DNA of 64,000 nucleotides from positions 1 through 64,000 of the forward strand of contig JBLWGC010000085.1 of assembly GCA_048772705.1 (NCBI GenBank), read 5' to 3'. The notes beneath the pieces are model-generated. The model worked only from the letters and a program-made list of their open reading frames with translations, did not search any database and was not told the DNA's origin. This stretch comes from Leidyana gryllorum EB-2025a. Taxonomy: Eukaryota; Protista; Apicomplexa. Every line of letters begins with the position of its first letter. The stretch's first letter is position 1. A program made the translations under genes and the position numbers. Shown here one piece after another: positions 4,286 through 64,000 of the stretch.

Positions 4286-4502
4286 TTCTCGACAACGCGA
4301 ATACCAACTAGCGCGTGGCCGCGGCTCAACACACTCCTCAACCCGTCTAACTTTTGGTGGCTCGTCACTCTGCCGAAAAACAGTGTATTTATAAATAGCT
4401 CATATGCACACACACCCACACACACTCAATGGAAACACTCATATAATCTCGCATAAAGGCTACCCATAAATACCGCACCACGCCACCGGACACAAATACA
4501 CA

Positions 4503-5793
4503 TCAGACAACCAATGATCTGTGCCCATTCGACACCATTCGACGTCTTCGCCCCCAAACGGCAGCATGTGTGGTCGGAGACGCCGGCCGGCCACAGCAGT
4601 CGGAGTCGACCTCGGGATGCCGTACTAGGTGCGATATCGAATGGAGGCAGGCAGAGAGGGGGAGCACAAGTTGCGGACTCACCACAAAAGAGGACAACAA
4701 CGTGTCGATCGCCGGTGCCCCCAGATGGGCTATTTGATACACCGCTTCGAAGAGTGGGAACTCGTCCGATATAGAATAACGTTGTAAAACTTCGTGGACT
4801 TCAATACACGTGAGATGCCCCTGCAGTTTCTGTCCGTTCAAAAGTTCAGTTTCGATCTCCTCCCAGAGACTTGCGTTGCCTCCACCTCTCTTCACAAACT
4901 CGGCAGCACATCGAACATTTCTACCGCCGTAGCAGGTTGTCACCACATCAGCAACTCCGGCACTCTCCAACAAAGTTTCCTGGGTGGGCGAGTGAAAAGG
5001 TTTGCCGGATTCTCCAGCTGCGGGGAATTGGACTTACTTCCAGAACACCATCAAAGAAAATTAGAGCGAATTTCCGCATCTCTTTGATACCAATACGGAT
5101 GGCTGCGGCTTTAGTGTTGCTTCCATAGCCGAGGCCATCACAGAAGCCGGCAGCCAGGGCGACCACATTCTTCAGCGCTCCACAAATCTGTACTCCGAAG
5201 GGATCTGGGATAGCGCTAATCCGAAATGCTGGTCGATGGAAAAGCTTTTGCCAGAGGACAGCGTCTGCCTCGTGGGTGTACCCCAAAGTTGCTTCAGCGA
5301 ACTCTTCTTTAGCGATATCGAGAGCAACATTGGCTCCGCTGAGTGCGCAGCACGGTATCTCAAGCTTCTCGGATATCAATTGTGAGAAGACTTTTGGTCT
5401 TCCTGACGCATCAACATCAAGACCTTTGATCAAGCTCACAGCCCTCTGGTTGACTGGTCTTGCTGAATTCGCGGGAATGTCAGACAGGAATGAGGAGACA
5501 AATTGGTGGGGGAGGACGAACACCAGAAGATCGGAGACCCGGAGGATCTCCTCCTTGGAATCTGTTGCCCTTACATTGACTGGGATGGGGAACCCAGGGA
5601 GGTATTTGGCGTTTTCGTGGTCTTCATTAATCATTTCTTTGACCGTGCGAACACCATAGGTGTCACCCTGATGTGCCCAGACGAGAACATCTTCGTTGAA
5701 GTCGTCATGACGGGCAGCATTCATACCCACGATGCGGGCAACCGCAGTGCCCCAATTGCCGCTACCAATAACTCCAATTCGTAGGCCCCCCAT
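4503..5793 (-). CDS. GPD1: NAD-dependent glycerol-3-phosphate dehydrogenase, multi-exon (exact 3' end uncertain)
   Basis: GSGNWGTA Rossmann motif, GALKNVVALAAG, TTCYGGRN and NGQKLQG; intron about 5038-4980 (GTAAGT...CAG). Confidence 0.92.
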
Positions 5794-5840
5794 ATCACAA
5801 TTTTTTCTACAGCTCGTCGCGATATTGGTGCGTCAACACC

Positions 5841-7576: not shown

Positions 7577-7590
7577 TCAATTTAGGTTTT

Positions 7591-8666
7591 TTAAAATACG
7601 GCAGTTGAAATGGTAGCAGCTAAGGACTGCACGATCTCCTCTTGGAGGCACTCATCGACAGCTGACTCGAGGCGCCGCTTTGCATTCATCTTGCCGACCT
7701 GCCAACGGATGTCTGAAACAGGATGCACATGTATTGAACCCACCCTATTGAGCATAAACGAGTCGTCGTCGAGTTGTAGTTGTTGGGTCACTTCCTCCTT
7801 CCAGCTGCTCACCAGCGACTTGATGTTTGACACGCGCTTAGTCTGATTCTCGCGATGTACATCATATGGTTGCATACTCAGAGCTTGTACCCATCTCGTC
7901 TGCATCAGTCCCATCAACATCCTCTGTTCCAGATCGCTCTTGCGATAAGATATAACTATGGAATAGTAGTGCTTGTTTAAGCCGTGTATCAGGGCCGTGA
8001 TTGCGGGCTTGGTGAGATGGCCGATGTTACTGGTAGTTTGCCGTGGTTCTTGACTCAGCATCAGCAAATGGGGATTGATCAATCGGAAGCAGTCAATGAC
8101 AGCTACACCTTTAACAGACTGGATTGGGTCCACAACCACTCCAACGGCTCTGTCGTGAGTGAGACTCTCAATGGAGTTAACGGTGGCCTTACCGAGAGTT
8201 CAGCTGCTCGAAAGACTGCTGCGTGTTGATATCTGTGCCGGAGAACCAACAGCCGAACCCAGGGTGACTGTGGTACCATCCGACGACCATTTCCGGCCGT
8301 CCGGTACGTTTCAACATATCGAGCATTTCAGCCTGGTACACGGGATCAACGGCCTCAACTGACACAGTGTTGCCCGATTGCGGCATTGAGAAGACATCGA
8401 CAACCTTGATGGTGTAGTCGTCCACAAACTCGCCAAGCATCAATCCCATAACTTCCATGGGCACCCCAGCTCGGCCATGCCGAAGCATCTTAATCAATGC
8501 GAGGGAGGAGATGATGACCTACCGGACATTCAACACTGTAAGACACTCATATTGACACTTCACATACCTGCTCGGCTGTGTCCGCCAACGGCACATCTCC
8601 GTCATTGCCAGCCCCTCCTCCAAGACCTCCTATCAAGCTGCGAAGATGTGGTGGGAGTCCTGCCAT
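7591..8666 (-). CDS. RPN11: 26S proteasome deubiquitinase RPN11 (JAMM/MPN+), multi-exon
   Basis: PLADTAEQ|[25 protein letters not shown] and [18 protein letters not shown]; ATG at 8666, first intron GTATGT at 8567. Confidence 0.95.
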
Positions 8667-8694
8667 CTCGACTTTATTTTTTGAGAGACGCAAA

Positions 8695-11600
8695 CTAGGC
8701 TACTATGCATTCCACCCCAAGTGTTGACCGCCGACTTGTGGTTGGAGGTCCTTCATCTACCAGCAGGGCTTTCAACGGCTTTTGTACGAACTTCCCTCTC
8801 AACCGTTCTCCGAGAAAAGCTTCGCCAAACGTCAGAGGCATATTCTCACCCTCCTCTTGAGCGTCTTCCTGGTACCAACGTTTCAATTGGACCATCAATT
8901 GCGCATCATCTATCATGTCCTCCAAATCGTCCCTGCATCGATGCGATATGCGGTACGAGACGCCCCCACACTCACTGCCACTCGTAGAGTAGCTGCGCCA
9001 GACAAGAGTTGATCTCTCGCTGGAGAGCGGAAGTCTTTTCCTGTAGCGCCTTGCGAGTGGAAATGAGCACCGGCAGAACCTGACAATGGGCAATCGATTA
9101 CTGGAAGAAAGGGGGCCTCGAACTCACGCTCTTGCTCAGATACTGTTTCAAAATGGCACGGTTGAAGCGCGCCCGCTGCTCTTTCTGCAGTAAGACGTCC
9201 TCCTCCCCGGTGCTGTCCGGCGCCAAGCCCGCCTTCTCCAGAGGCGTGGCCGAAGCGAAAGTCAACTTCAAGTCAGCACTAGACAGAACCACTAAAACAT
9301 CGCTCATGGCTCGTCCACTTCCGGAGGTCCGAGAAAGTGGCGTCTCCAGAGGTGGTGCGCCGCCAGGGTTCTGTCGACTGGGTAAGAAGGCTTGAAGGAA
9401 GTCGTTCAACAATCTTTTCATAACCTCGTGTCGCTGGGAATCCGAGGCAAATGAGAGAAGTGCACTGTATATTCTGTATCGTCGAACGTTGTCCGCACTC
9501 ATTTTGAACGACTCCACACACAGTCCGGTCACGTCGCACAATTCGGCTGCAATGGGGTGGATGTCCAGAGCCAGCGGCACAGAAGGATGATCTTCGAAGC
9601 CGTTCAGGAAGCAGACCATCTCTAAGAAATAGGTATTCAGGAGATCTTTCTGCAATTACTAGTGGCTAGAGGTTCAGCTTGCCCATCCACTCACCACTCG
9701 CGGTAACACTATACCCGCCACCAACTTGTGGGCCAAGCTACGAACCTGCGGATTGTCATCTCCCAAGGCAAACAAGAAACTGTCAGTGTGGGAGTGAGTA
9801 GTCCGACCATACCACTACGTCCGACTCACTGATACAGTAGAAGACCTCTCAATTTGAGATAATCCTGAGCTGCTAATTTGGACAGCAAGACCAGGATTTG
9901 AATGCGAGCTTGGAACGAGTTCTCGCATGCATATGAACTCAGCTGCGCTGACATCACTGGGAAATAAGGATCCACCAAAGAGGTCATCTTCAACGTGAAG
10001 TCATAAACAGCCTGTTGAGATCGAATGGAGCCGTGCTTTTCGGCAGCTCACTCACAAAGGCGAGATTCATTAACAACGGGTCCTTGCCAGCCGTCACCGC
10101 AGGCTGTTGAGGTCCCCCACCGGTGTGTAACGAGAGCCCAGACTGTATCAAAGAAGGCATCAGTCGCTTGGCTACCGCCTCGTGCGATAACATGATCTGA
10201 GCAGCCGAAACCAAAGCTACCCCGCGTAACCAGATGGGTACTTCATGCATCCAATGAGTCATCTCATCATCCCCCTTAGACATAGAGCGAAACCCATTTC
10301 GCGCCAAAGCCAGAAACAATGTCGCGAATACGGGTGCCACTTCAGCCATATACACATGAGCTTTGTTCGAGTGGGGGAGCGTCGAGCTCACGGTGTACAG
10401 AGTTCCAACCATCCGCAGAGCCACGGCACCAGCATGAAGCGTGACTTCGCCTCGTCGAGATGTACTCAACAGCGATATCAAACCTTTACATTGGAGTAAT
10501 AACGAGGTGATTTCCTCTCGTAGGGTTTTATTGTCGGTGAACTGTTCCAAATACGCGCGGGTGAGGACTGGAACTAGTCGGTGCGACAGATCGTTGCTCT
10601 TGATTCAGAGACACTGTGTGCCAGTCAAACATCTGTGCTTACTCTCAGCCTCAAGTTGAGAGCCTCTCGCACGTCTTTACGCAGCTCATCCGACACATTC
10701 AGTCGCATACATTGTCGCCATTGCTCCCATGCAATCGTGTCCGTTTTTGGGGAGTGGTGGACTACAAAGTTGCGAAGCCAAGCTTCGAGACACGACGCAT
10801 CCACAGATCGAAGCCACTGGGGACGGTATCGGAATCCGATGGTCAACAAGACGGACAGAAGAGGCAAAACCTCTCGCGTTGCCCCTTGAGCAACCCGTCT
10901 CAAACACCTCTGTATCAGAGAGCCGCCATTGTACCCGCTGTTGCCAACTGAAAGGGTCATCATCGAACTCACTCTTTCAGCGCGGCTGATAACAGCACGC
11001 GATGCAGCAGCTCTTGACCGTCCCAACACTCCAGAACTCTCGAGACTATTTCCGAGGAGAGTCGACCTGTGTCACCTGCTGTGCCTGGCTTTAATAGGAC
11101 GTCGTGAAGCAGTTCGCGTGCTTTCGCAGCTACACTGTCCTCGTTGTCGGCACACAAGAAGAGTAAGTTTGGCAACAAGCAGTGCTGCTCGATCCCATTC
11201 TTGCGTTCTGTCCAAAGTGCCCGGCCATTCATCGATCTCCTTACCGAGAGAGGCTCCAATGAAAGACACCATTCGTTGTCTCACGATGACCGAACTGTCG
11301 TCAACCAACATGCCGAGCGTTTGGGCGTTCACCAGACAGCACGGGGGCAAACGCATTCTTTCGCTGTACTCCGAGAAGAGATTGGCACAGGTGTCCAGCA
11401 ACCCGACAGTGGCCCGTCGAACAGCAGATTTCTCATCCAGCAATCTCAGATCAATCAAAGTCAAGACCGATTTCCAAGGGAAGCCTAGAGTAGACGATCC
11501 TAACACCTCTCCGAAAAGCCATTGGAGGTCTTCAGCAGGCCGCCCAGAGTAACTATTCAATAATCCCGAGAGCGCTTCGATCGCTCGCAGGCGTACACTG

Positions 11601-13289
11601 GACAAGGCATCCTCCGCCCGAGTGAAGATCCCCGCCAGAAGCCCGTTCTGCAGCAACATCATACTCTCGAACCCATGGGAGGCAACGAGCAAAGCTTCGG
11701 CTGCTTCCGTGGAGATGACCCGAATAGACGATCTGTCGTGGAGTTGGAGTCTGAGGAGGACGGCGACCAAATATGTCAGTGGCCGTCCAGCTTCGAGGAG
11801 CTTGCGTGCAATGGCCTGTAACCAGTTAGTCAAACGTTCTCGGCACTCTCGCTTTTCAGGGCAGTAGAAGAGAGCTTGGCAGAAGAATGCAGTGATGGGA
11901 TGACCTGTTTCGGCCGTCACGCACGATCTCTTAGTGACGCTCTTACCTAACTCCAGTGGAACTTTGGGAACATCTTTCACCTCAGGCACCTCACTGTCGG
12001 GTTCGTCATTTTCGTCATCGCTTTCGCGCTCAGGTTCTGCAGCCTGCAAGTCGAAGTTCGAAACCTCCCAGGGTTCTGGAGCCATCAATATCGCTTCAAC
12101 GATATCGAACGAACGCTGCGAATGGTCGATATGGCATAATCAGATGGTCGACTTGCCTGTTGAATGACTTGAATATTACTGCTTTGCCCCGTGCGCGCAT
12201 GTCCACCCAAGAGGGGAGCCAAAGTGTGCAGGATTATGTGCAGTAATCCGACGAGGGTCGCACTGTCGAAGGCACCAGAGCAACGCCATCTTGAGCGGGG
12301 TAGGCCCCAAAGGATAGCGGCATCGCACGTCTGGCATTGACCATCAAGAGTGGAGGCTGTTTCCAGTAATGTGGTGAAGAGGATCCTCAAGTTGGTAGAT
12401 GCAGCACTACTGCAACTCAGTTCCACCGAGCGACGCAGGTGCTCGTGACCTTCCTCAGAATTGACTAGACCTCCTAAAACGATCGGACATCTCCCCAACT
12501 CTTTTATGCTTTGCAGTTGTGAATTGGTGAGTCCATCCCCATTGGTGACCAAACTATACATGCACGGATTGGTGAGTAGTCCGAGGACTGCGCGAGTTTC
12601 CTCATCCTGGGGCGATACGAAGCGAAGGGCGAGCAGAAGCTGATGACGAGGTGATCGTGGTACGTCGTCTCCTCGAGAAGCCCACCAGTGTCCAACAGTG
12701 CCAGATATACATGAGCGACGCGGGTATCTCACCCCGTACACTTCTGACTATAAGAAGAACCGCGACAAAAGAGACACAGACATGGAGAGGCAGAGATCTG
12801 ACCCCTGGGTACTTCTCTCTCAGGAGGGTCTCCAAGCCTTGCCAGAGAGAGCTTTGCTATAGAGAGGAAGTTCATGTGGCGGTGCTGTCCTGAGGTTGGA
12901 CAGGGACAGCCTACCTCTCCGCTGTTGTCTGTCGAAGTGATTCGCCGGTTATAATGCAAGACACAGTCCAGTACATCTTTCAAGTCACCACTGAGAATAA
13001 TTGCCGTTTGATCTAAAGTAGACACATCACATTGTCCAATGGTCTACGGAGGGTTTTCGGCGCTCAAACGTGTGACACCCACCTCTTGCAATAGCCCATA
13101 GAGGGGCGTTGCCAGGGCTCGGACGGATGGGTCGCATCTAAAGGCTCCCAGATCGTTTCGGAAAGATTCATCGACATCATCATCATTGAAGCCTTCAAGG
13201 CAAGCTGCTTCATCCTGTCCAACCTCGAGCGCCCGCAGCAGTCGTAAGGCCGCATCGTAGTCATAGCCTTCAAAGTCGACGACTGACAT
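8695..13289 (-). CDS. Large HEAT-repeat protein, probably condensin II subunit D3 (Cnd1 family), many exons
   Basis: HEAT signatures EDALSSVRLRAIEALS, DEKSAVRRATVGLL, DDSSVIVRQR and DDNPQVR, spread over consecutive minus-strand ORFs separated by GT-AG introns. Confidence 0.6.
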
Positions 13290-25185: not shown

Positions 25186-25287
25186 TCAGACCAGAGGTCC
25201 TCAAGAAACTCGAAGCGTTAAAGCGAGCGCCTCACTGCACCATCTAGTAAAAGGCGAGAGGGTGATAAGTGTTGAGGCTCTCCACAC
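25186..25287 (-). ncRNA. U5: U5 spliceosomal snRNA
   Basis: Invariant loop I GCCTTTTAC (25255-25247) closed by CACC-CTCT/AGA-T-GGTG, outer stem GCCTCA/TGAGGC, Sm-like AGTTTCTTG and 3' hairpin GGACC-TCT-GGTCT. Confidence 0.85.
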
Positions 25288-25747
25288 GAATTTTGGAGCT
25301 GAGACCCGCCAGCCGCCGGAGACGGCGTGTGTACTGGATGTAACGGATGGGTAATCGACTTTGTCGACCCAACCAATGATCTGAAGTGATGTCGGCCCAC
25401 CGCTGATCGATGTTTGACTGACACTCGCCTGGTGGGATAACTTCCCATTGTGACCCGGTTGGGAGGCGATACTAACACACTGAAGCAGATCTTAAGGTCC
25501 CTCAGGCTGGGCTGGAGACTCTGGACGGTGCTCACCCGAAGGTGTGCACAGTCAAGGGACACCCGTGTGGTCACACCAGGCTGGGAACAGAGCGGGTCAG
25601 CCACACACTTTGGACAGGGTGGGGGAGAACCAAATGGAACTGCTTCTTTTATCAATTCTCAATTCGTTGACTTTTATGCGGGTGGGTGTCGGTCGAGGGG
25701 GAGACGAGACGGGACTGATATTTTCAACAAAACTTCGAATAAAACTC

Positions 25748-25958
25748 AACTTACCTGCGGGTTGCAGTGTCTGGCTCAAGAAGCGATGCGCAGGGGGAGG
25801 AGCAACCACTGCACTCTGGTGAATGTAAGTCCCTCGGGAGGGTCACACATAGTGTGGTTCTCCCACCTGAGACTTTCTGAGAGGGCGGACGGGGCTCGAC
25901 TCGACGCCGACATTCGAGACTAATTTGAGCAAATTGAGTGAGATCGGTCAATCACATC
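25748..25958 (+). ncRNA. U1: U1 spliceosomal snRNA, variant A (extended)
   Basis: 5' AACTTACCTG, SL1 loop GCTCAAGAAG, SL2 loop CTGCACTC, Sm-like AATTTGAG; homologous to the copy at 62880; 3' end approximate. Confidence 0.85.
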
Positions 25959-36712: not shown

Positions 36713-39700
36713 TCATTGCTCCCCTGGACCATTCCAGAAACATTGGAGGATTTCTTTTGGGGCTGGAGGGGTCTTGGTGGTAAAGCACTTTTGCAACACC
36801 ATGGCAACGGCTTCAGCATCTGTTGCGGGAAATTCTGCTCCGCTGGCGGCCGGGGCGGTGGTGGCGGCGGTGGAGGCGGCGGTGGACTGCTCCGTCATTG
36901 TCTCCCCTTCGATTCCTGCCAAGCTGTGTTGGCTGAGGTCAGAGTCGGGATGGTATAGTTTCTGGAGACCCATCACCATCTGCTTGGCGACATCTTCTCC
37001 CATCCCCGCTTCACCTTCCGTTTTGTGCCATTTAGCAGTAAATTGCGTCTCGGGGTAAGCTGGATTGGTCCTCTGTTTCGGATGGAGTGTTACCTCGCGG
37101 TTTGCCAACCATTTGAGGACGCTAATCGCTTCCTCACCTTCCTCGTAAGTCAGAGGCTTCAAGGCAACATATTCCAAAACTCCTGCCGAGATCACGGCCG
37201 ACTGCGAGTCGGGGGAAGTTTCCAGACTTTCCTTGATCAGTTGGACCGTGGGAGCTCGTCCAATCATGCGGGCAGCATTCCTGAGAGCGTCTGGAACGCG
37301 TTTACCACCGACTGCAGTAATGTGTACGGGCTCCTCGCGTATGGCCGATTCGGTGCTGCCCAGGCATGGTACCGCGGCATCAGGCATCTGCGCGGCCACC
37401 CCGGCTTGAAGCTTCTCTTCCTTCAACTTCCGCTCAACGTACCCAATAGGGGCCTTGCAAACTTCCAGACAATCAGCCTGATCAGCTTCGGGTCTTGCAG
37501 AGCACACTTCCTCACAAGTATAGTGAAACTTATCGAAGTCTGATTTGGGACCGGCTTTTTGTTGTTGGGGGCCAGTCTTCTCAGCGGCACGTAAGTATAT
37601 CGGCCAAGTGACATGCTCATTATCGCAATCCTTACACTCTACCCCAATCACGCTTCCATCAGCTTGCTCTTCACCACAGATCCATAGGGGGTTGGAAGGG
37701 TATAACTCCTGATCCGGCCTCCGCGGCGGCTCGCTGCAAATCATGTCTTCTGGAACATTTTGGCCCTTGTAAGCAACCTTGTAGAGCCTGGTGAGTCGCT
37801 CTTCATCCTCAAAGTGACCGAACAGTACGATATGACGACTTTCTTCTTGTCGTTGTGCTTTGATCGTCTCATCCGGGATTTGCTGTTCTTGGGCAACGGA
37901 CTCCCCGGCCGGGTCGGGGCAAATACCGTCTGCTATTCGTTGTGCTTTGATCCTCTCCCGCCGGTTTTCCAGCCACTGGTCGAGCTGTGGCTGGGGCAGG
38001 AGGGGAGGGAACCTCGGGTCCGCAGGCTCCCCACACGGCTCTTCTTGGACACCGAGCTCGAGCTCCTCGGACAGATTGATGCGACGACCTTCCAGGGGAG
38101 TTTTCTTCAGCCACCCAACATTCGGATCATTGCAGTCTGAACATTCAATCGCACTCAAGGGTCCATCCTGTGCGCGTTGAGCACAGAGCCACTGGTCGGG
38201 AGCGCTCGTCTGCTCCGGGTCGGTGCAGATCATGTCATCTGGAACATCTTGGCCCTCGTAAGGAATTTTGCCAATTTTGTCCTCAATGTCATCAGGACGT
38301 AGTCTGGCAGGCCTGATGCGAACCCGGTTGGAGAGAGGGATAGGTGGGTCGGCACGCAGCTTTTGCTGACGACGGAGAGTGAACTCGTTCTCATCATCCT
38401 GTGGCTGGGCGGACAGCTTGACGCGACGACCGGGTCTCCGGTTGGAGACAGGGAAAGGTGGGTCGGCAGGCAGCGTTTCCAGCTGGAGGAGAGTGAACTC
38501 GTCCTCATCATCCTGTGGCTGGGCAGACAGCTTGACGCGACGACCTCTCTGTTGTTGCTCGTGACGAGAGGGGTCGGTGCAAAAACCGTTTGCTATTCGT
38601 TGGGCTTTGATCCTCTCCCGCCGGTCTTCCAGCCACTGATCGAGCTCTGGCTTGGGCAGGAGGGGAACGAACCTCGGGTCCTCAATCTCCCCACACGGGT
38701 CCTCTTGGACAACGGACTCGGTGTTCGCGGATGGCTCGGTGCAAAAACCGTTTGCTATTCGTTGAGCTTTGATCCTCTCCCGCCGGTCTTCCAGCCACTG
38801 ATCGAGCTCTGGCTTGGGCAGGAGGGGAACCAACCTCGGGTCCTCAATCTCCCCACAAGGGTCCTCTTGGACAACGGACTCGGTGTTCGCGGGCAGCTTG
38901 ATGCGACGACCTTGTTGGGGAGCCTGGTCCAGCCACCCAGCTTTCGCATCAATGCACTCTGAACATTCAATCGCAGTCAAGCCTCCATCCGGTGCGCGTT
39001 CAGCACAGAGCCACCGGTTCGGCACAATCAACTTAATAATAGGGCCCTTCTGCCGGTCGTAGCAGATCATGTCCTTTGGAACATCTTGGTCGTCGTATCG
39101 AATTTTGCCAATTTCGCATGGAGTCTTTGATCCCTTACAAGAGTCGTTGGAGACAGGGATAGGTGGGTCGGCACGCAGCTTTTGCTGACGACGGAGAGTG
39201 AACCCGTTCTCATCATCCTGTGGCTGGGCGGACAGCTTGACGAGACGACCGGGTCTCCGGTTGGAGACAGGGAAAGGTGGGTCGGCAGGCAGCGTTTCCA
39301 GCCGGAGGAGAGTGAACTCGTCCTCATCATCCTGTGGCTGGGCGGACAGCTTGATGCGACGACCTCCCTGTTGTTGCTCGTGATGAGAGGGGTCGGCGGC
39401 CGGGTCGGGGCAAATACCGTCGGCTATTCGTTGTGCTTTGATCCTCTCCCGCCGGTTTTCCAGCCACTGGTCGAGCTGTGGCTGGGGCAGGAGGGGAATG
39501 CGCTTCGGGTCCTTAATCTCCCCACACGGGTCTTCTTGGACAACGGACTCGGGCTCCGCAGACGGCTCGGGGCAAATACCGTCGGCTATTCGTTGTGCTT
39601 TGATCCTCTCCCGCCGGTTTTCCAGCCACTGGTCGAGCTGTGGCTGGGGCAGAAGGGGAATGCGCTTCGGGTCCTTAATCTCCCCACACGGGTCCTCTTG

Positions 39701-42055
39701 GACAACGGACTCGGGCTCCGCAGACGGCTCGGGGCAAATACCGTCGGCTATTCGTTGTGCTTTGATCCTCTCCCGCCGGTTTTCCAGCCACTGGTCGAGC
39801 TGTGGCTGGGGCAGGAGGGGAATGCGCTTCGGGTCCTTAATCTCCCCACACGGGTCCTCTTGGACAACGGACTCGGGCTCCGCAGACGGCTCGGGGCAAA
39901 TACCGTCGGCTATTCGTTGTGCTTTGATCCTCTCCCGCCGGTTTTCCAGCCACTGGTCGAGCTGTGGCTGGGGCAGGAGGGGAATGCGCTTCGGGTCCTT
40001 AATCTCCCCACACGGGTCTTCTTGGACAACGGACTCGGGCTCCGCAGACGGCTCGGGGCAAATACCGTCGGCTATTCGTTGTGCTTTGATCCTCTCCCGC
40101 CGGTTTTCCAGCCACTGGTCGAGCTGTGGCTGGGGCAGGAGGGGAATGCGCTTCGGGTCCTTAATCTCCCCACACGGGTCCTCTTGGACAACGGACTCGG
40201 GCTCCGCAGACGGCTCGGGGCAAATACCGTCGGCTATTCGTTGTGCTTTGATCCTCTCCCGCCGGTTTTCCAGCCACTGGTCGAGCTGTGGCTGGGGCAG
40301 GAGGGGAATGCGCTTCGGGTCCTTAATCTCCCCACACGGGTCCTCTTGGACAACGGACTCGGGCTCCGCAGACGGCTCGGGGCAAATACCGTCGGCTATT
40401 CGTTGTGCTTTGATCCTCTCCCGCCGGTTTTCCAGCCACTGGTCGAGCTGTGGCTGGGGCAGGAGGGGAATGCGCTTCGGGTCCTTAATCTCCCCACACG
40501 GGTCTTCTTGGACAACGGACTCGGGCTCCGCAGACGGCTCGGGGCAAATCCCGTCGGCTATTCGTTGTGCTTTGATCCTCTCCCGCCGGTTTTCCAGCCA
40601 CTGGTCGAGCTGTGGCTGGGGCAGGAGGGGAATGCGCTTCGGGTCCTTAATCTCCCCACACGGGTCCTCTTGGACAACGGACTCGGGCTCCGCAGACGGC
40701 TCGGGGCAAATACCGTCGGCTATTCGTTGTGCTTTGATCCTCTCCCGCCGGTTTTCCAGCCACTGGTCGAGCTGTGGCTGGGGCAGGAGGGGAACGAACC
40801 TCGGGTCCTCAATCTCCCCACACGGGTCTTCTTGGACAACGGACTCGGGCTCCGCAGACGGCTCGGGGCAAATACCGTCGGCTATTCGTTGTGCTTTGAT
40901 CCTCTCCCGCCGGTTTTCCAGCCACTGGTCGAGCTGTGGCTGGGGCAGAAGGGGAACGCGCCTCGGGTCCTTAATCTCCCCACACGGGTCTTCTTGGACA
41001 ACGGACTCGGTGTTCGCGGCCGGGTCGGGGCAAATACCGTCGGCTATTCGTTGGGCTTTGATCCTCTCCCGCCGGTTTGCCAGCCAGTCTTCGAGCTCTG
41101 GCTGGGGCAGAAGGGGAATTAAGCTCGGGTTCTTAATCTCCCCACACGGGTCTTCTTCGACAACGGGCTCGGGGCAAATACCGTCTATTATTCGTTGTGC
41201 TTTGATCCTCTCCCGCCCGTTTGCCAGCCAGTTATCGAGCTGTGGCTGGGGCAGAAGGGGAATTATGCTCGGGTCCTCAAACTCCCCACACGGGTCTTCT
41301 TGGACAACGGACTCGGGCTCCGCAGACGGCTCGGGGCAAATACCGTCGGCTATTCGTTGTGCTTTGATCCTCTCCCGCCGGTTTGCCAGCCAGTCTTCGA
41401 GCTGTGGCTGGGGCAGAAGGGGTTTTACGCTCGGGTCCTCAATCTCCCCACACGGGTCAGCGTCATCAGGACGAGGCTGCTTTTGCAGCGCCAGCTTTTT
41501 GAACTCGTACTGCTGTCTGGGTTTGGAAGTTGAACGTGAGAGCGTAGTGACTTCGTGGCCTTGATCAGCAGTGGCATTGGAGGGCTGCAATTTGGAAACG
41601 AATGAGAATCAGCTCGTCAACTCGACGTTACCTACCTGAGTGCCCGTAACCCAATTCAAGACCTTTCGGACTAGGCCAATTTCAGAGGCGGCGGTGGCAT
41701 TCTGCTTGGTGGCTTGCTCATGCAAAAATTTGATCTCGCCGCCTTTCGATTTCGATTTCGATCCTTGGGTGGCTCTTTGATACTGACGTGTCGCCTTGCG
41801 CTTTGCTTGATGATTGGGCTCAGGCAGCCAGTGGGGTACAGTTGCGATTGGCTGGCCATTCACTCTCGCCACATGGGGTGCAGTGCTATTCGCTGTTCCG
41901 TTGTGAGAAAGAACGGTTCCATTGCCCTCGACTGAGTATGTCAATGTCGAGTTCCCGTTGAAGACTTGAGCAGTAAGCAGAGGCAGATGCTGCATCAATG
42001 AGGGGCTCTTAGAGTCATGAGAAGTAAGGGATTCAACCCGCACGTTGGGAGCCAT
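36713..42055 (-). CDS. Repeat protein of about 1760 aa, LTAQV-leader family
   Basis: Exon 1 (42055-41636) joins the 1625-aa ORF through a phase-0 51-nt intron, 41635-41585 (GTAGGT...TTGCAG); C-terminal domain shared with the 43403 and 47337 genes. Confidence 0.85.
39400..41460 (-). repeat. 162-bp coding tandem array, 13 units (54 aa each), with 3 more dispersed units at 37.9-38.9 kb
   Basis: Period 162 nt (motif recurs at 39497, 39659 ... 40631); 8 units are almost identical. Confidence 0.95.
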
Positions 42056-45806: not shown

Positions 45807-46025
45807 ACGTCCAGGCGACATGACGAGCGCAGAGGAACCCCAGAGTGCGTGTTCCTGTTTTCGTAGACCATGGATCATAAACGATATAGCTGGACTGAAT
45901 AGCGCCGTTTCACCTCATTCCCCTCCGGCTCAACTCATTTTGATGGTCTGTGAGCCGTCCAGGCGACATGACGAGCACAGAGGAACCCTACCGTGCGTAA
46001 ACCTTTTTTCGTGGACCATAGACCC
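45807..46025 (+). repeat. Direct repeat of about 70 bp x2 upstream of U2 variant A; diverged copies at about 48360 and 49350
   Basis: CGTCCAGGCGACATGACGAGCRCAGAGGAACCC...GTGCGT...TTTTCGTRGACCAT at 45807 and 45956. Confidence 0.8.
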
Positions 46026-46073: not shown

Positions 46074-46086
46074 TGTGTCGCACACA
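46074..46086 (+). promoter_or_regulatory. Candidate U2 upstream element TGTGTCGCACACA
   Basis: The identical 13-mer lies at -48 of U2-A and at -47 (48876) of U2-B, while the flanks are otherwise diverged. Confidence 0.6.
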
Positions 46087-46121
46087 CCGAACTCGCTGGC
46101 CAGATTTCTACCGAAAAACTC

Positions 46122-46298
46122 AATCTCGGCCTTCCAGCTCAGATCAATTGTATTTAAAAGTTCTTTCCTTGGTTATTTGAGGAAGGGGACATATGTCTCC
46201 GACTACTAACCAATATTTATGTCTTGGATCGCAGCTCTGATTCGCAGCAAGCCGTGAGAAGAGTCCCTGAACTTGCACTTTATCAGGAGGCTCTACCC
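46122..46298 (+). ncRNA. U2: U2 spliceosomal snRNA, variant A (non-canonical branch-point recognition sequence)
   Basis: TCTCGGCC-TTCC-AGCTCAGATCAA...GTTCTT; stem IIa TTCCTT/GAGGAA; IIc GGTTA/TAACC; IIb GGGGAC/GTCTCC; Sm-like ATTTATG; SL IV loop ACTTGCACTTTA. Confidence 0.9.
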
Positions 46299-46578
46299 TG
46301 CCAATTGCGGCGACAAAGTATGGTGCATAGTGTCCCCGGCTATGTTAGGGACGGACGTCGGCCGGCAGATGTTTTCGAGTGCCAGGCGGCCTCGCAGCCA
46401 CCTGCGTGCAGCCCCTCCGGCCGACAAACCTCCCTAGCTTACTGTGCCTGTTTGACCACATAGCCTCTGATTCGTCGGTTGATCGGGCTGGGGGGGATCG
46501 TCGGCTGCAGGGGCTTCTGCAGCCGACGATCGAGCAACCACCGGTGTGGAACCGTGGATCCCGAGAAGTGCGGCCTTG

Positions 46579-46911
46579 TGATCTGTAATAGACACACAGA
46601 CACAACCCAGCTGCATCGCCCATTGGGACGATGGCGCACACAACTACAAAAGCACAGATAGAATAGAAAGAATAGACAGAGCGAGAGATGCGTGACTCTA
46701 ATCAGTGACTATAGATCAACAAAACTACAACTCATCTACTACAACTTCTACTACTCATCATACCCGTTATAACCCGATCACAGAGCCTACGCCTACAAAG
46801 GCGATCCTCCAAGGAACCAGACATGTCGGAACAAGTTGAAGAGGTCACGCCAATCCAACACCCCGTCACCACCGATCCAAACCCCTCCCAGGACCCCGCA
46901 AACTCCAATCA
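46579..46911. mobile_element. 333-bp dispersed element, second full copy
   Basis: TGATCTGTAA...CTCCAATCA, near-identical to 35823-36156. Confidence 0.65.
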
Positions 46912-47336
46912 CGCGTTGTTGAGGTGTCTTCCAATAATTAGGCAAAGGTTCAGAGCACATGCGCACACATTTGGCCATCCAACTGGGGAAAAAAATCGAG
47001 ACCGCACATACATTCACTTGATGGAGGCGTTTTCGCTGTTACTTCGCCTACGAATACAAACTGCTCATTCACGTACAGTACTACAGTACGCAACGCTTCT
47101 TCATGATGCAAGCCTTTGATGATAGTGTTGCATAGTTTGATTACTTTAGAATGCACCAGCATAAAGGAGCGTCTGCTCCTCAGCACCTCTTTCTAGTTTT
47201 AAGTGTATCTATCCAATGTCTCTATCGTACCAGTCTTCCCTCGCTCCGGCCAAGAATAGCTTCACCAAACTCTTGATTGAGAGGGATTTATTCAATGTTG
47301 GGACGGTCTGTCACCAGGTTGCTTCTGATCAGACTC

Positions 47337-48281
47337 TCACTGCGCATCAGACTCTTCCTGCTGATCAGTCTCTCCCCGTTGAAGACCGCTGAAGAGCTTC
47401 AGTAGTTGTTCGGTATTTGGACGAGAGTAGGGGAAAGCTCGTGTGATATGGAAGTAAGCGGCCTGGGCTATTTTTCGAGCCGTTGGCCCTTCGGGACCCG
47501 CTGCCGCCTCTTCGGCTGCGGGACCGGACTTAGCAGTGGACATTTCGGCGGCTGACGAGCTATCACCTTCCGATTCAGGAGCCGAGTTCGAATCAGAATC
47601 GTTGACCAAACCTTGTGTGGAGACCTGGGAGTTGGGGTGGTAGCGAGCTTGGAGTGCCCACACTATTCCATCCGCCTCCGCTCCCATGAACCCATAAATA
47701 TCTGTTGCTGGACGGACCTCTGTCATGAAGTCGTTCTCGTTTGCGGTTTCAGCATCGGTACGGCCTGGACAAAGCCTCACCTCATGAGACCCCAGCCATT
47801 CAATGACACTAACAAGTCTCTGAGCCTCGTACACGCTCAAAGGTACCGTTGCAGCAAATTGAAAGAGGGCTGCTGAAAGCACCACCGACTGTTGGTCTGG
47901 GAAGTCTTGCAGCAATCCCCTAACTGCGGCGGATTCTGAAGACGCTGATAGGACTTGTTCGAGGTACCTCAGACATTGGGCGCTTTGCTTGGTCTCGGGG
48001 AAAAGCTGGCTCTCGTCCACGCCTGCACGGCCGAACCATCGGGGTATTAACCAAGCAAGCGCACGGAATATCGACCAACTACCGGCTTGTTGGTCTCCAC
48101 CCGCATGGGGTCCGTCCGGTCGACGGGGGGGTTCTTCACCCTCACCGTGTGATTGTGAAGCCGGGGCGCTGCCTGTTGAGCTTCCCAAAACCTGGGCTGT
48201 CAAAAGTGTCAAGTGTTGCAGGGCTTTGCGCTCATAAACGTCACCACAAGCGACAGCCGGAACGCGAAGGCTGCACGTCAT
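47337..48281 (-). CDS. LTAQV-leader family member 3 (minimal linker)
   Basis: MTCSLRV...QHLTLLTAQV plus the C-domain ...WLGSHEVRLCP...LQARYHPNSQVS. Confidence 0.8.
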   Translation of the reverse strand: MTCSLRVPAVACGDVYERKALQHLTLLTAQVLGSSTGSAPASQSHGEGEEPPRRPDGPHAGGDQQAGSWSIFRALAWLIPRWFGRAGVDESQLFPETKQSAQCLRYLEQVLSASSESAAVRGLLQDFPDQQSVVLSAALFQFAATVPLSVYEAQRLVSVIEWLGSHEVRLCPGRTDAETANENDFMTEVRPATDIYGFMGAEADGIVWALQARYHPNSQVSTQGLVNDSDSNSAPESEGDSSSAAEMSTAKSGPAAEEAAAGPEGPTARKIAQAAYFHITRAFPYSRPNTEQLLKLFSGLQRGETDQQEESDAQ

Positions 48282-48922
48282 TCTTCTGCTAAACTAACGT
48301 TGATCAAAATACAACACGAAAATTTGAGGCTCTGCCGAACATAAGACACAACACTAATCGCGCGACATGACGAAAACCAGATACAGTCTTTGGACCAGAC
48401 CGACTCCGCTCCATCAAACAGGGATTGAACCAATGCAGTTCGTGTACAACCACCACGTAACCCGACACATGTTTTGAGCACAACTGTCAAAAGAGGCGAA
48501 AGAACTTGGCACGATGCGGCCAACGGTGGGCAGATTTGCGTGTCATTAGATACGTATGAAGGAGACTGATATCCCTCCTTCTTGGAGCAGTCAGCACTAA
48601 ACGGTCGTGCAAAAACCCCACATGTCGCTTTCATAGCGGTCAACTCATACTTAGCTCATAGTTAGCGACACCTCCACCTTGTCATGAGTATGTAAACCGA
48701 ACAAGAGTATTGTACCCGTGCTCAAGCAAACATCCAACTGTACACACACCAAAAGCACATTGCCTCAGCATCGCTGCACACACCCACAGCGAATTCGTCG
48801 GCAGTGCGGAGTTGACGACGACCCTTTTTTCTTCGGCAAGAATTTTGAAGTGCGAATTGATTGGGACCAGCCACATGTGTCGCACACATGGTATTCTAAT
48901 TGAAATTGAATTACAGAAGCTC

Positions 48923-49105
48923 AATCTCGGCCTTCCAGCTCAGATCAATTGTATTTTAAAGTTCTTTCCTTGGTAATGCATGGAAGGAGACGAATGACTC
49001 CATCTTTTACCAATATTTGTTAATTGGATCACCAGCCATGATGGTGGATTGTCCCTATCTTGCTGTGTGGGGAGCCTTTGAGCCAACACTATCTCCAACG
49101 GCTCC
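48923..49105 (+). ncRNA. U2: U2 spliceosomal snRNA, variant B
   Basis: First ~50 nt nearly identical to variant A; IIc covaries (GGTAA/TTACC); SL III CAC-CAGC/GCTG-T-GTG; SL IV GAGCC...GGCTC with loop CCAACACTAT. Confidence 0.85.
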
Positions 49106-49899
49106 GTCCTGTCCATTTGGACGACAATTGTTGTGCACAATAATTCTTTACTGAGACACAAGCTATAATCTTTGGTACCATCTTCTTGATCGACTGCATG
49201 GCTGGCTGCCTCTGCTCCGCCAACCTGGGCTGATAAAAGGAAAAGGCATGATTGAGACATGATCGGACCTAGACAGGAAGCACAGAGGAGACGGTCTCTC
49301 CAATGACTAAACGCACACGGTGACGTACGTGTCTCCCGAAACCAAAAGTTCCAGGCGGGATGACGACCATAGAGGGACCCTACTGTGCGTACTCTTTCTT
49401 TTGGAGAAGATAGACCATAGGCTGCTAAGCTGGGTCTACGTCGGCTTGGGGAGCCATTTAAAGATCTACAAAAGCAGGCATTCGTTTCCTTTCCTTTAAT
49501 GTGACACAGTCCTATCACTAGAATGCTGCTAAACAACTAGTAATCACATCACAGTGGCAGATCCCCTCCACACCTACTTAGGCTGTGACATACTCGCACT
49601 ACGAGGAATATAGCAGGTTTGTCATTGGTGGGCACGAAGTATTACTTTCGTTCTCCATTGCCCAATGAAGTGCAGCAAACTCCTGAGCGTAATGAGCACA
49701 AATCAGGCATTTGAGTCAGTGATCTTCGAGGAGCAGCGAGAGTACCGACGTTGTTCACAAGCCGTTGGATGGGCTGATGGTTGTGTGGTGCCTCCTCTCC
49801 ATATTTGTACCCGACCATCCCAGGAGAGAGGGTTGTTGCTCAATGCAGACCGTTGTCTAGGGAGAGGTAATTTCTCTCTTTTCGCTCATCACTCTACCG

Positions 49900-51649: not shown

Positions 51650-53272
51650 TCTAAGTCAAAGGACCAGAAAAGGTGTTCGGAGAATTTTGCGACAATCGAT
51701 GTGATTCTGGTTTGTGAACCGTTACTGTCCTGTCTAGTTGGCGCGAGCAGAGGTGAGTGCGTCATTTGTTTTTTCGTTAGTTTGATCTGTTTGGTGCGTT
51801 GGCATAGTACTTGGCATCATCTAACTGTTGTTTTTGGTAGTAGATGTTCAATCACTAAATCGGTAAAAACACGTGTGTGTCAAAGTGTGTCTGGTACGGC
51901 CGGGCACGAGGTGCTTTACTACGACTAAGCTGCTGTTGACAGAGTTAACAGATGCCTTTGCACCTCATGTCCCAAAAGAATTCAGAGTAACTACTTAATG
52001 AACGGTGCACCTAAGCAGGCAGTCATATGTCTCATCGGGTAGTGCCGGTCGTAAGCAGCGTGGAACACTGCCTGGTTCGGTGTCCATAAGCTATTCCTTG
52101 GGTCCTTAAGATGTCGCCCTTACTGCTGGTAGTGTCAATCAGAAATCAGAAACAGACACAACATCATGTTTTGAATCTGATCCAAAAAATGATGTTGTGT
52201 CTATTTCTGATTGACACTACCAGCAGTAGGAGCGACGTCTTAAGGACCCAATAAATAGTTCATGGACACCGGATCAGGCAGTTTAGCCACAGTAAAGCAC
52301 CCCTGTGCCCGGGGAGACACACTACTTCTACACCCACGCGTTTTTACATAATTGTGTAGGTCGGCGAAACCCGCAAGGGTGAGCCCGACCATTACCGTAG
52401 GTTTTTCGGGGGCTCTTAGGGGGCACCAGAAACGACCTTTTAGTGAATTAGTGATTTGATTAGAACCTTTAACCTGATTATCTCGCTTACCTTAGGATTA
52501 GTAGTAGCCTCATTCGTTAGCAGCCAGGTTTTGGGCAAACCCCCCCTATGTGTAACATTCCAAACTTATACTTCTCCGAGTACTCCCTCACCTAACTTAC
52601 AAATCGCTAAGTCGACGCCTCACATGCCAACAGACAAACAATCTAAACAGTATCATTCACACATAACAACTTCCCAACTTGCTCCATATCCACTTAAGCA
52701 AACTGAGCATATTACACATCACAGCATACTTACCCAAATGGTACTCATACACTCACGCAATCATGCATCTGCAGCTCATATACTCTCACAACTCAATACA
52801 TAACAAGCAAGATACCTGTCAACATGCTCAGTAACGAAACTACATCATCACAGTCTTTTCTTAGCACAATACACACCACATCAGATTTCCCTTTTGCCTA
52901 ATACAGCAACCGCAACGTGTATGCAATGGAAAGGTAAACACTCGCGACCACGCACACACAGTACGATGCAGCTTCAACCACACACGTAAACCACATAGCT
53001 CGACTGCAAACAACAGTACCAGTAGCCATCGAAGCCGACCGAAACGGCCAATCAAAGGTTACAGCCAAACTAGTCAGTGATTGAACATCCACGAACTGAA
53101 AACAACAACTAGATGCACCCAGCTAGACTAACAAAAACCAGCCGACGTTCCCACCTGCGCTTCCTCTGATGACCGTTGTGGATGAAAGGAGTTGACGGTT
53201 AAGACACACCTACACAGACAGTGTGAGGCACCCGGCCCCATTCGTCCGATCATTTCCGGTGCGATGTCTTGG
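51650..53272. repeat. Nested degenerate palindrome (foldback) with a ~95-bp inner stem
   Basis: Arms 52067-52167/52189-52282, 51863-51920/52291-52347 and about 51650-51858/53076-53272. Confidence 0.85.
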
Positions 53273-62679: not shown

Positions 62680-62880
62680 TCGAGGGAGTACCCAAGCGCT
62701 TTGCCATAAACAAAGTCGCTCTGTCGGTGTCGAACCGAGTCCCGTCCGCCCTGTCATAAAATCTCAGATGGAAGCATCACGCATTGTTGATACTTTCGGG
62801 AGCGTCACCAGAGTGCAAAGGCTGCTCAGCTCCCTGCCCACCTCTTCCTGATCAGGTGAAATGCAATCCGCAGGTAAGTT
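62680..62880 (-). ncRNA. U1: U1 spliceosomal snRNA, variant B
   Basis: AACTTACCTGCGGATTGCA; SL1 TTCACCT-GATCAGGAAG-AGGTGGG; SL2 loop TTTGCACTCT; GGGCGGACGGG block shared with variant A; Sm-like GTTTATG. Confidence 0.9.
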
Positions 62881-63904
62881 AAAAATTGCCGAATTTTCAA
62901 ATGCAAGGGGACTTCGTTATGTCACTCGAAGCTACCGTCCCAGGCGACAGTTTCTCTATCCCTACAAGCATGAGTCGTTACAAGAGTTGTGTCGATGTCA
63001 AGAGCTTAGCATCCTGAAGCTCGAGTTTTGGTTTCTGGCTGGCTAGCAGACATCATGAGAACAGGAAGACCAACAACCTTCGACATCAGACGTAGTCAGC
63101 CCATCGGAAAGATCAACTGGGCTGAGACGAAGTGATTGATCATCACGAGAAAGTCCTGTCTGCAACGGAGAGTAACCTTCGGATGCACCTGGTGCTGAGA
63201 ACTAAAACAAAATAAAGGCAGCCAATATTCTATAGATTGATGGTTGATTAGAGAGAAGACATAGGGCAAATCTTTCAGGGTGGGGGGCGAGATAGACTTA
63301 CCAACGGCATTCCCGCCCAGATCACTGCAACCAGGCGGGGGACTAAAGCCGACGGCAAGTAAATCGAAGTGTTAGGATAGCGCGACGAAGACTCTGGTGG
63401 AGGAAACACGGTGGGGATAGTGAATGGCTACGAATCTGGTGAGATGGACGTTGAAGTTCCCAAGGAGAGAGAGCATTATGATCATGGAATGACCTGACTG
63501 GGGAGAGAGCCTAATGAAAAGCATTCTGTTGGACTCAATCCAAGCGTTACCACCGATCGAAAGAGGGAGGAGCTTCGTGTTGTTTCATTCCTCACCTCCG
63601 AGAATACCCACCAACTCGAGAGTTTGCACATTTGAAGTTATTGAGAGAGATAGTCTAAGGTGTAAGAAGTTGTTAAAGATCAGATGTGTATCAAGCCCAT
63701 GCGTTAGAGGTAACTCCTTACGCTAGAGACTAGAGCCGAGTAGATCCAGTGAATAACTCAACCATCAGATTTCAGACATCGAGGTTCTGTAGGTCGAATA
63801 CATCGGAAAGTGTGGTGGCGACTAAGCTTTCCGCTACAGTTTCACGGAGACTTCTCCATAACAACACTACCAAAGTGCAATACGATTGTCGCCGAGCTCG
63901 ACCG

Positions 63905-64000
63905 GAAAGAGCCATCTGAGAGAGTGCTGACTCAGAGTCTCTCCACACAGCTAGATAGGGAGTACCCCCTATCGCGGCTGGTGATCCATTTGAGAAATAT
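63905..64000 (-). ncRNA. U2: U2 snRNA variant C, 3' half only (5' part lies beyond the window)
   Basis: Minus strand ATATTTCTCAAATGGATCACCAGCC...GCTGTGTGGAGAGACTCTGAG-TCAGCACTCT-CTCAGATGGCTC aligns with variant B at 49013-49102. Confidence 0.8.

What the first reader, a model, noticed from the sequence alone, without database searches (positions are those of the whole stretch)
46122..49105. U2 snRNAs with an altered branch-point recognition sequence (GUAUUU instead of GUAGUA)
Seen: both complete U2 copies read AGATCAA-TTGTATTT(A/T)AAA-GTTCTT where canonical U2 has AGATCAA-GTGTAGTATCT-GTTCTT. The scaffold is kept by compensatory change: stem IIc is GGTTA/TAACC in A and GGTAA/TTACC in B, and stems IIa, IIb, III and IV still pair although the 3' halves have diverged. 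The altered 5' region is the best-conserved part between the copies, which argues against simple pseudogene decay. Known: GUAGUA is almost invariant, with trypanosomatid U2 a known exception. Inference: this spliceosome has relaxed or changed branch-site reading. The introns I inspected here show no consistent CTRAC; one has ATAAC, which would pair with GUAU.
Basis: partly seen in the sequence, partly recalled or inferred. Interest (0 to 1): 0.9.

Follow-up and report, generated by a model that had tools for sequence, protein, structure and literature searches.

The report
Gregarine U2 RNAs lacking GUAGUA
In this gregarine parasite no detected copy of U2, the splicing RNA that finds an intron's branch point, keeps the nearly universal reading sequence, and its introns show no matching signal, so it probably picks branch points by position and proteins rather than by base pairing.

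Summary
Confirmed and extended. The window comes from a gregarine apicomplexan (15.5 Mb). Both U2 genes read GUAUUU. The genome holds 16 full-length U2 loci. None has canonical GUAGUA in context, and the 13 whose branch-recognition region could be read show six different hexamers. Only G33-U34-A35 is invariant. It is followed by a 6-10 nt, about 93% A/U linker (canonical: 6 nt). The genes look functional: compensatory changes in stems IIa/IIb/IIc, intact U2/U6 helices, the base of the branch-interacting stem-loop, and a shared upstream element at 13/16 loci. U1, U5 and U6 recognition sequences are canonical. In 265 predicted short GTRAG...YAG introns there is no CTRAY, no WTRAY/ATAAC and not even a -2 U bias, although spike-ins show such motifs would be detected. 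So branch reading is relaxed, not re-coded; the ATAAC idea is unsupported. Likely mechanism: position- and protein-guided branch choice near -20 with a weak, permissive U2 helix. Trypanosomatid U2 is the precedent, but this organism cis-splices about one intron per kb. No RNA runs were listed, so expression and branch points are untested. This scan reported the same genome-wide loss before from another contig (s1-574762).

The parts
46117..46301 (+). U2 snRNA gene, copy A
   Evidence: Rfam RF00004 54.4 bits; custom model 110.8 bits
46142..46163 (+). Branch-interacting stem-loop region of A (G25 to C45 equivalent); recognition hexamer GUAUUU at 46150-46155
46074..46084 (+). Upstream near-palindromic element TGTGTCGCACA, candidate U2 promoter element (about -43)
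   Evidence: found 33-47 nt upstream of 13/16 U2 loci; 61 sites genome-wide; function inferred
46171..46211 (+). Stem IIc arms of A (46171-46175 with 46207-46211), enclosing stem IIb
46215..46221 (+). Sm-site-like AUUUAUG of A, same variant as several U1 genes of this genome
46309..46315 (+). Conserved downstream motif GGCGACA, candidate 3' end signal
   Evidence: this motif or a close variant in 10 of 12 readable copies; function inferred
48918..49113 (+). U2 snRNA gene, copy B
   Evidence: Rfam 40.3 bits, E 7e-6; custom model 105.2 bits
48943..48964 (+). Branch-interacting stem-loop region of B; hexamer GUAUUU at 48951-48956
48876..48886 (+). Upstream element TGTGTCGCACA of B
49120..49126 (+). 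Downstream motif GACGACA of B
63900..64000 (-). 3' half of a third U2 gene (copy C, C85:63900-64094); its hexamer GUAAUU lies just outside the window
25188..25290 (-). U5 snRNA gene with canonical loop 1 (contrast)
25747..25910 (+). U1 snRNA gene with canonical ACUUACCUG (contrast)
62729..62881 (-). Second U1 snRNA gene, canonical 5' end
4980..5037 (-). Homology-supported 58-nt intron of glycerol-3-phosphate dehydrogenase, example substrate without CTRAY
   Evidence: tblastn frame switch; recovered exactly by the gene finder
4625..4682 (-). Second 58-nt intron of the same gene, no CTRAY
   Evidence: seen in the three-frame reading and predicted; the joined product of 406 aa matches homologue lengths of 396-409 aa

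Best explanation
These are the working U2 snRNAs of a gregarine whose major spliceosome has largely given up sequence-specific branch-site reading. Shown: all readable paralogues keep the parts needed for catalysis and snRNP architecture (U2/U6 helices Ia, Ib, II; stems IIa/IIb/IIc; the BSL base pairs G25-C45, A26-U44 and position 28 with G42; G33-U34-A35). Positions 36-41 became a variable-length A/U linker, with G31>U and C40/U41>AA shared by all readable copies. Shown: predicted introns have strong 5' and 3' splice sites but no detectable branch consensus. Inferred: U1, U2AF/SF1 and SF3b place U2 about 15-22 nt upstream of the AG of a uniformly short (40-55 nt) intron. The weak, slippery A/U stem-loop opens easily, and a loose, wobble-tolerant helix forms around whichever A is in range. 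With no selection for the G36:C(-3) pair, the linker drifts among paralogues under a structural constraint only (stay A/U, keep UU and AA).
For: 16 full-length loci, none canonical. Covariation: 86% of cells paired, 12 of 19 pairs with two-sided changes, 0/500 shuffles, slid controls 42-57%. U2/U6 duplexes kept in 12/12. Upstream element at 13/16 loci. Single hits for SF1 and SF3B1; U4 x5, U6 x8, U1 x42 present, recognition motifs canonical in the U1, U5 and U6 copies read. 265 introns: CTRAY 4.9% vs 8.8%, TNA z -0.7, U2-pairing z 0.3-0.5, best-of-12-variants z 0.6-1.3; spike-ins detected at z 3.1-4.8 for a human-like motif in 50% of introns. AG dinucleotides drop from about 13 to about 5 per position 3' of -20. 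Forced BSL energy is weaker than canonical in 10 of 12 distinct variants. Precedent: trypanosomes with an altered U2 box do not use complementarity for branch choice (PMC4950102, PMC4015677).
Against: No expression data: no sequencing run was listed. Introns are ab initio predictions from 258 kb, seeded with a GTRAGT/YAG prior, so errors could dilute a signal; a human-like motif in a quarter of introns or fewer would be missed. A weak CAY/ANAY excess exists at -26..-11. GUA itself is invariant although introns do not mirror it, which relaxation alone does not explain. Ciliates have variable branch points yet keep GUAGUA (PMC13685798), so loss of an intron consensus does not force this change. 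Three loci were not read in the branch region. Two variants (C173, C211) have a stronger BSL than canonical.
Confidence: 0.66

Rival explanations
1. Re-coded reading: the new hexamers pair with a new A/U-rich branch consensus (WWUAAY, ATAAC).
For: GUA is invariant and the linker is A/U in all copies. WNAY is modestly enriched at -26..-11, ratio 1.26 against 1.03 in intergenic DNA.
Against: WTRAY, ATAAC, TRAY and RTNA are at or below chance; variant pairing scores have z below 2; a 25% spike-in of WTRAY is detected. The WNAY excess is mostly ANAY/CAY, which cannot pair with A35, and partly reflects AG avoidance. An EM motif search lies within the null range.
Confidence: 0.08
2. Repertoire model: different U2 paralogues serve different introns or life stages, each with its own branch preference.
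For: At least 12 distinct loop sequences, six hexamers, and paralogues about 41% identical in the 3' half that still fold. Two lineages (C211, C230) lack the upstream element shared by the others, which may mean different regulation.
Against: Best-of-all-variants pairing is not above shuffles (z 0.6-1.3). U1 is also amplified and diverged in its body, yet keeps one recognition sequence, so amplification is a general trait of this genome's snRNA genes.
Confidence: 0.1
3. The variants are silent or minor copies and a canonical U2 exists but is missing from the assembly.
For: 237 contigs, completeness unknown; snRNA arrays can collapse; only 47 of 119 and 150 of 3838 candidates were scored; B scores under the Rfam cut-off.
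Against: No canonical 18-mer within 2 mismatches anywhere, and 3-mismatch hits equal the control (12 vs 12). Tandem U1 arrays are assembled. One variant sits on the 1.7-Mb contig. All readable lineages share the same derived changes, and the stems covary.
Confidence: 0.08
4. Escape from U2-targeting retrotransposons: Utopia and Keno insert between U2 nt 38 and 39, exactly the stretch that varies here, so mutating it could protect the genes.
For: The insertion site coincides with the variable linker (PMC4640811). Unverified scan notes report elements next to U1, U2 and U6 genes in this genome.
Against: All 16 model hits are full length; no split U2 or 3' fragment starting near nt 39 was seen. 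Hosts of Utopia keep the canonical site (PMC4640811). This could only be a trigger and still needs relaxed splicing.
Confidence: 0.05
5. The organism trans-splices like trypanosomes and the U2 change goes with that.
For: Trypanosomatid U2 has a similar A/U-rich box; many coding sequences here are 8-30 nt apart.
Against: Short spacers occur in divergent pairs too, and there is no AG acceptor just before nearly all of these start codons. Cis-introns are abundant and U1 is canonical and amplified.
Confidence: 0.03

Closest known systems
Canonical U2 snRNA (Rfam RF00004; human, yeast, ciliates)
   Same: Stem I, U2/U6 helix I and II arms, BSL base, G33-U34-A35, stems IIa/IIb/IIc, III, IV, Sm-like site.
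   Different: G31>U, G36 lost, 36-41 replaced by a 6-10 nt A/U linker that differs between paralogues. Two of the three proposed toehold nucleotides (positions 35-37, which pair with intron -2 to -4; PMC13019295) are no longer fixed. A 2026 survey found GUAGUA in all species examined except for substitutions in two sponges (PMC13685798).
Trypanosomatid U2 snRNA (Leishmania major, Trypanosoma brucei)
   Same: A/U-rich replacement of the box (UUAUAA in L. major, PMC4950102); branch choice reported not to use complementarity (PMC4015677).
   Different: Trypanosomes almost only trans-splice and their U2 lacks stem-loop III. This gregarine cis-splices about one intron per kb, keeps G33 and stems III/IV, and has 16 diverged copies with linkers of different length.
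Ciliate and Porospora short-intron splicing
   Same: Short uniform introns with weak or positional branch signals (Porospora: an A at -6 in 28-nt introns, PMC9250747; ciliates: variable branch points, PMC13685798).
   Different: Ciliates keep GUAGUA. Here introns are 40-55 nt with no fixed-position A, and U2 itself changed. U2 of other gregarines could not be obtained, so how far the change extends in the group is unknown.
U12 snRNA (RF00007)
   Same: Also reads a branch site with a different box.
   Different: No U12 match in the genome (without a positive control); these genes match U2, have IIa/IIb/IIc, and the introns are major-type.

Membership tests
U2 snRNA (RF00004) | Full-length covariance-model match | tested here: met
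   A 54.4 bits, above 46; B 40.3 bits, below the cut-off but E 7e-6; 7 of 11 genome hits above the cut-off
U2 snRNA (RF00004) | GCU and GAUC arms pairing with U6 (helix Ib, Ia) and 5' end pairing (helix II) | tested here: met
   duplexes with this genome's U6 in 12/12 readable copies; GAUU in two
U2 snRNA (RF00004) | Stems IIa, IIb and alternative IIc with compensatory change | tested here: met
   0/500 shuffles reach the observed pairing or covariation; slid controls far lower; relatedness of the copies inflates significance
U2 snRNA (RF00004) | Branch-interacting stem-loop | tested here: inconclusive
   base pairs 25-45, 26-44, 28-42 kept in all; inner stem weaker than canonical in 10 of 12 variants; the structure depends on proteins in vivo
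Canonical U2 snRNA | Branch recognition sequence GUAGUA | tested here: not met
   0 of 16 loci carry TGTAGTA...GTTCT; filed therefore as a variant U2 homologue, not a canonical U2
U2 snRNA (RF00004) | Sm site and stem IV loop | tested here: inconclusive
   A: AUUUAUG and UUGCAC loop; B: AUUUGUU and AACAC loop; similar Sm variants in U1 and U5
U2 snRNA (RF00004) | Expressed, TMG-capped, Sm/SF3-bound, required for splicing | not testable with these tools
   no sequencing run listed
U12 snRNA (RF00007) | Covariance-model match | tested here: not met
   no match at E 0.01
Utopia/Keno-interrupted U2 | U2 gene split at nt 38/39 by a non-LTR element | tested here: not met
   all 16 hits cover model positions 1-112

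The most novel reading that the evidence does not exclude
A cis-splicing spliceosome that uses a repertoire of a dozen U2 snRNAs with different branch-reading loops, each serving its own introns or life stages, possibly together with loss of Prp5/DDX46 ATPase proofreading. This would be regulation of splicing by exchangeable U2 guides.
Probability: 0.1. Interest if true: 0.92.

Novelty: new variant of a known kind. Interest (0 to 1): 0.72.

Why it matters
The U2 GUAGUA box is among the most conserved RNA sequences in eukaryotes, even where branch points are degenerate, and why it stays fixed is an open question. This genome is a natural experiment. It suggests that an intron-rich cis-splicing organism can run without G36-A38, and it separates what cannot change (GUA, the BSL base, the U6 arms) from what can (sequence and even length of 36-41). 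[quoted passage not shown] The natural variants can be tested in existing yeast or human orthogonal U2 reporter systems.

Tried and rejected
No public reads were listed for the region. Two pattern scans of JGI metagenomes for this U2 type found nothing. The 18S search failed for technical reasons; the species is unidentified. The first gene-finder run (order-4 model) over-fitted and found 69 introns; it was replaced. The TAT enrichment near 3' ends proved to be a general non-coding bias. Whole-gene folding z-scores were uninformative (-0.66 and -0.89). Synteny to other gregarines failed because no conserved protein lies near the C211/C230 genes. Five G. niphandrodes introns were too few as a comparator. 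The Prp5 C-terminal KH domain had no hit but no positive control, and the DEAD list cannot be assigned to Prp5. Spliced models were searched exon by exon; joined proteins were not sent to any search. Papers on Plasmodium and Dictyostelium U2 were not held. Rejected: U12 identity, trans-splicing, interrupted U2 genes. A mixed-species assembly is unlikely (several variants share a contig; SF1 and SF3B1 each give one hit).

Full report
Observation. Rfam finds U2 at 46117-46301 (54.4 bits) and, in the genome search, at 48918-49113 (40.3 bits, E 7e-6) and C85:63900-64094. Positions 33-38 read GUAUUU in A and B. The IIc arms are as stated. A and B match at 55 of the first 57 nt but about 53% in the 3' half. 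B has single mismatches in IIa and IIb and a degenerate loop IV.

Organism. A window protein (glycerol-3-phosphate dehydrogenase) has its best hits in gregarines at 50-54% identity. The assembly has 15.5 Mb in 237 contigs. It is neither G. niphandrodes nor Porospora; the species is unidentified. SF1 and SF3B1 domains each give one hit and different U2 variants share contigs, so the copies are most likely paralogues of one genome.

Is there a canonical U2? The Rfam model gives 11 loci; a model built from their 5' domains gives 16, all full length. The canonical 18-mer has no match within 2 mismatches, and its 12 three-mismatch hits equal the control. TGTAGTA followed by GTTCT occurs 5 times, never in a U2 locus. 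Thirteen loci match GAT-NNN-TTGTA-gap-AGTTCT exactly; three could not be read. The hexamers are GUAUUU, GUAAUU, GUAAUA, GUAUUA, GUAAAA and GUAAAU. The stretch between A35 and G42 is 6-10 nt (canonical 6), and its variable part is 93% A/U (67 of 72 nt). All readable copies have U31-U32 and two A before G42, where the Rfam consensus has G31-U32 and C40-U41.

Do they look functional? Stems IIa, IIb and IIc are 86% paired over ten copies, with two-sided changes in 12 of 19 pairs; no shuffle reaches this and slid registers give 42-57%. All 12 readable copies pair with this genome's U6 in helices Ia, Ib and II and keep the BSL base. TGTGYSGCACA has 61 sites in the genome. Twelve of them lie 33-47 nt upstream of 13 of the 16 U2 genes, one shared by a head-to-head pair. 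GGCGACA or a close variant follows 10 of 12 copies. The derived changes are shared by all branches of the paralogue tree, which independent decay would not produce. U1 (42 loci, ACUUACCUG in the 14 read), U6 (8 loci, ACAGAGA and AGC), U5 loop 1 and U4 (5 loci) are present; no U12 was found. Among the recognition sequences read, only the branch reader changed. Expression is untested.

The substrates. A self-trained gene finder on 258 kb predicted 297 introns, mode 40-55 nt, donors GTRAG (R 96%, A 84%, G 91%), acceptors CAG 86% and TAG 10%. The donor and acceptor models were seeded with these consensuses; the branch region was not modelled. It recovered both dehydrogenase introns seen, and neighbouring exons hit Pfam domains in order (exon by exon; joined proteins were not searched). 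In 265 short introns CTRAY occurs in 4.9% (shuffled 8.8%), TRAY 25% (31%), ATAAC 1.1% (0.9%). Bulged-A pairing scores are at chance for each variant and for the best of twelve variants (z below 2) and at most z 2.2 for the canonical box. Spike-ins show that a human-like motif or a bare -2 U in half the introns, or WTRAY in a quarter, would be seen. What remains is a weak pyrimidine tract, G depletion and AG avoidance starting near -20, and a weak CAY/ANAY excess at -26..-11 that partly mirrors intergenic bias. An EM motif search stays within the null range.

Mechanism. In human and yeast, intron positions -2 to -4 are proposed to form a toehold with three BSL loop nucleotides, and a weaker BSL depends less on the branch sequence (PMC13019295). 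Here the nucleotides at 36 and 37 are free, the only G-C toehold pair is gone, and the forced BSL is weaker than canonical in 10 of 12 variants. I infer that strong splice sites and uniform intron length, with U2AF/SF1/SF3b, set the branch near -15 to -22, and that U2 supplies a permissive scaffold. Why GUA stays invariant is unexplained; protein contacts or branch helix geometry are likely. In yeast, BSL destabilisation removes the need for Prp5 ATPase (PMC11482624). An unverified scan note describes a DDX42/Prp5-like pseudo-helicase in this genome; I could not check it.

Comparison. L. major U2 has UUAUAA (PMC4950102) and trypanosome branch choice is reported not to rely on complementarity (PMC4015677), but those organisms almost only trans-splice. 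A 2026 survey found GUAGUA retained in all species examined bar two sponges, including ciliates with variable branch points (PMC13685798). I found no paper on gregarine U2, in a library that lacks most subscription journals, and could not obtain U2 from relatives, so the breadth of the change is open. Utopia and Keno target nt 38/39 (PMC4640811), but no split U2 was found.

Verdict. Real, genome-wide and probably functional: a new variant of U2. A follow-up on another contig of this genome reached the same genome-wide conclusion (s1-574762). This report adds five loci, the intron test with power controls and the BSL analysis. Interest 0.72.

Noticed in passing
window 45808-45874, 45951-46024, weaker 49348-49414: Dispersed element of about 74 nt with at least 12 copies at 85-92% identity genome-wide, a hairpin with loop AGGRACCC whose stem differs between copies, and a U-tract. 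No Rfam match. Small RNA family or SINE/MITE-like element.
   Followed up: partly
genome-wide (G000): snRNA genes are strongly amplified for a 15.5-Mb genome: U1 at least 42 (tandem array on C216), U2 16, U6 8, U4 5.
   Followed up: partly
G000 contigs C9, C33, C36, C71, C82, C104, C109, C126, C148, C169, C208, C213 and others: About 49 further TGTGYSGCACA sites are not next to detected U2 genes; some may mark other small RNA genes (one lies about 80 nt before a copy of the 74-nt element on C36).
   Followed up: no
window 4460-13289 and C230:100001-300000: Coding sequences often only 8-30 nt apart in tandem and 15-66 nt in divergent pairs, with A/T-rich spacers and almost never an AG just before the ATG: near-leaderless or overlapping transcripts rather than trans-splicing.
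   Followed up: partly
U1, U2, U5 genes: Sm sites deviate together from AUUUUUG towards AUUU(C/A)UG-like forms.
   Followed up: no
window 36713-41590 (minus): 1625-aa ORF built largely of a 54-aa (162-bp) Cys/Pro/Glu-rich tandem repeat.
   Followed up: no
window 41609-61862 (minus): Array of lineage-specific paralogous genes of unknown function interleaved with the snRNA genes.
   Followed up: no
window 52067-52282: Long inverted repeat, 80-nt arms 89% complementary, in an apparently non-coding stretch.
   Followed up: no
L002:638-708: A tRNA gene lies about 800 nt downstream of the C230 U2 gene on the same strand; this copy and C211 lack the upstream element of the other U2 genes.
   Followed up: no
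genome-wide (G000): No hit for the Prp5/DDX46 C-terminal KH domain PF23469; inconclusive without a positive control.
   Followed up: partly
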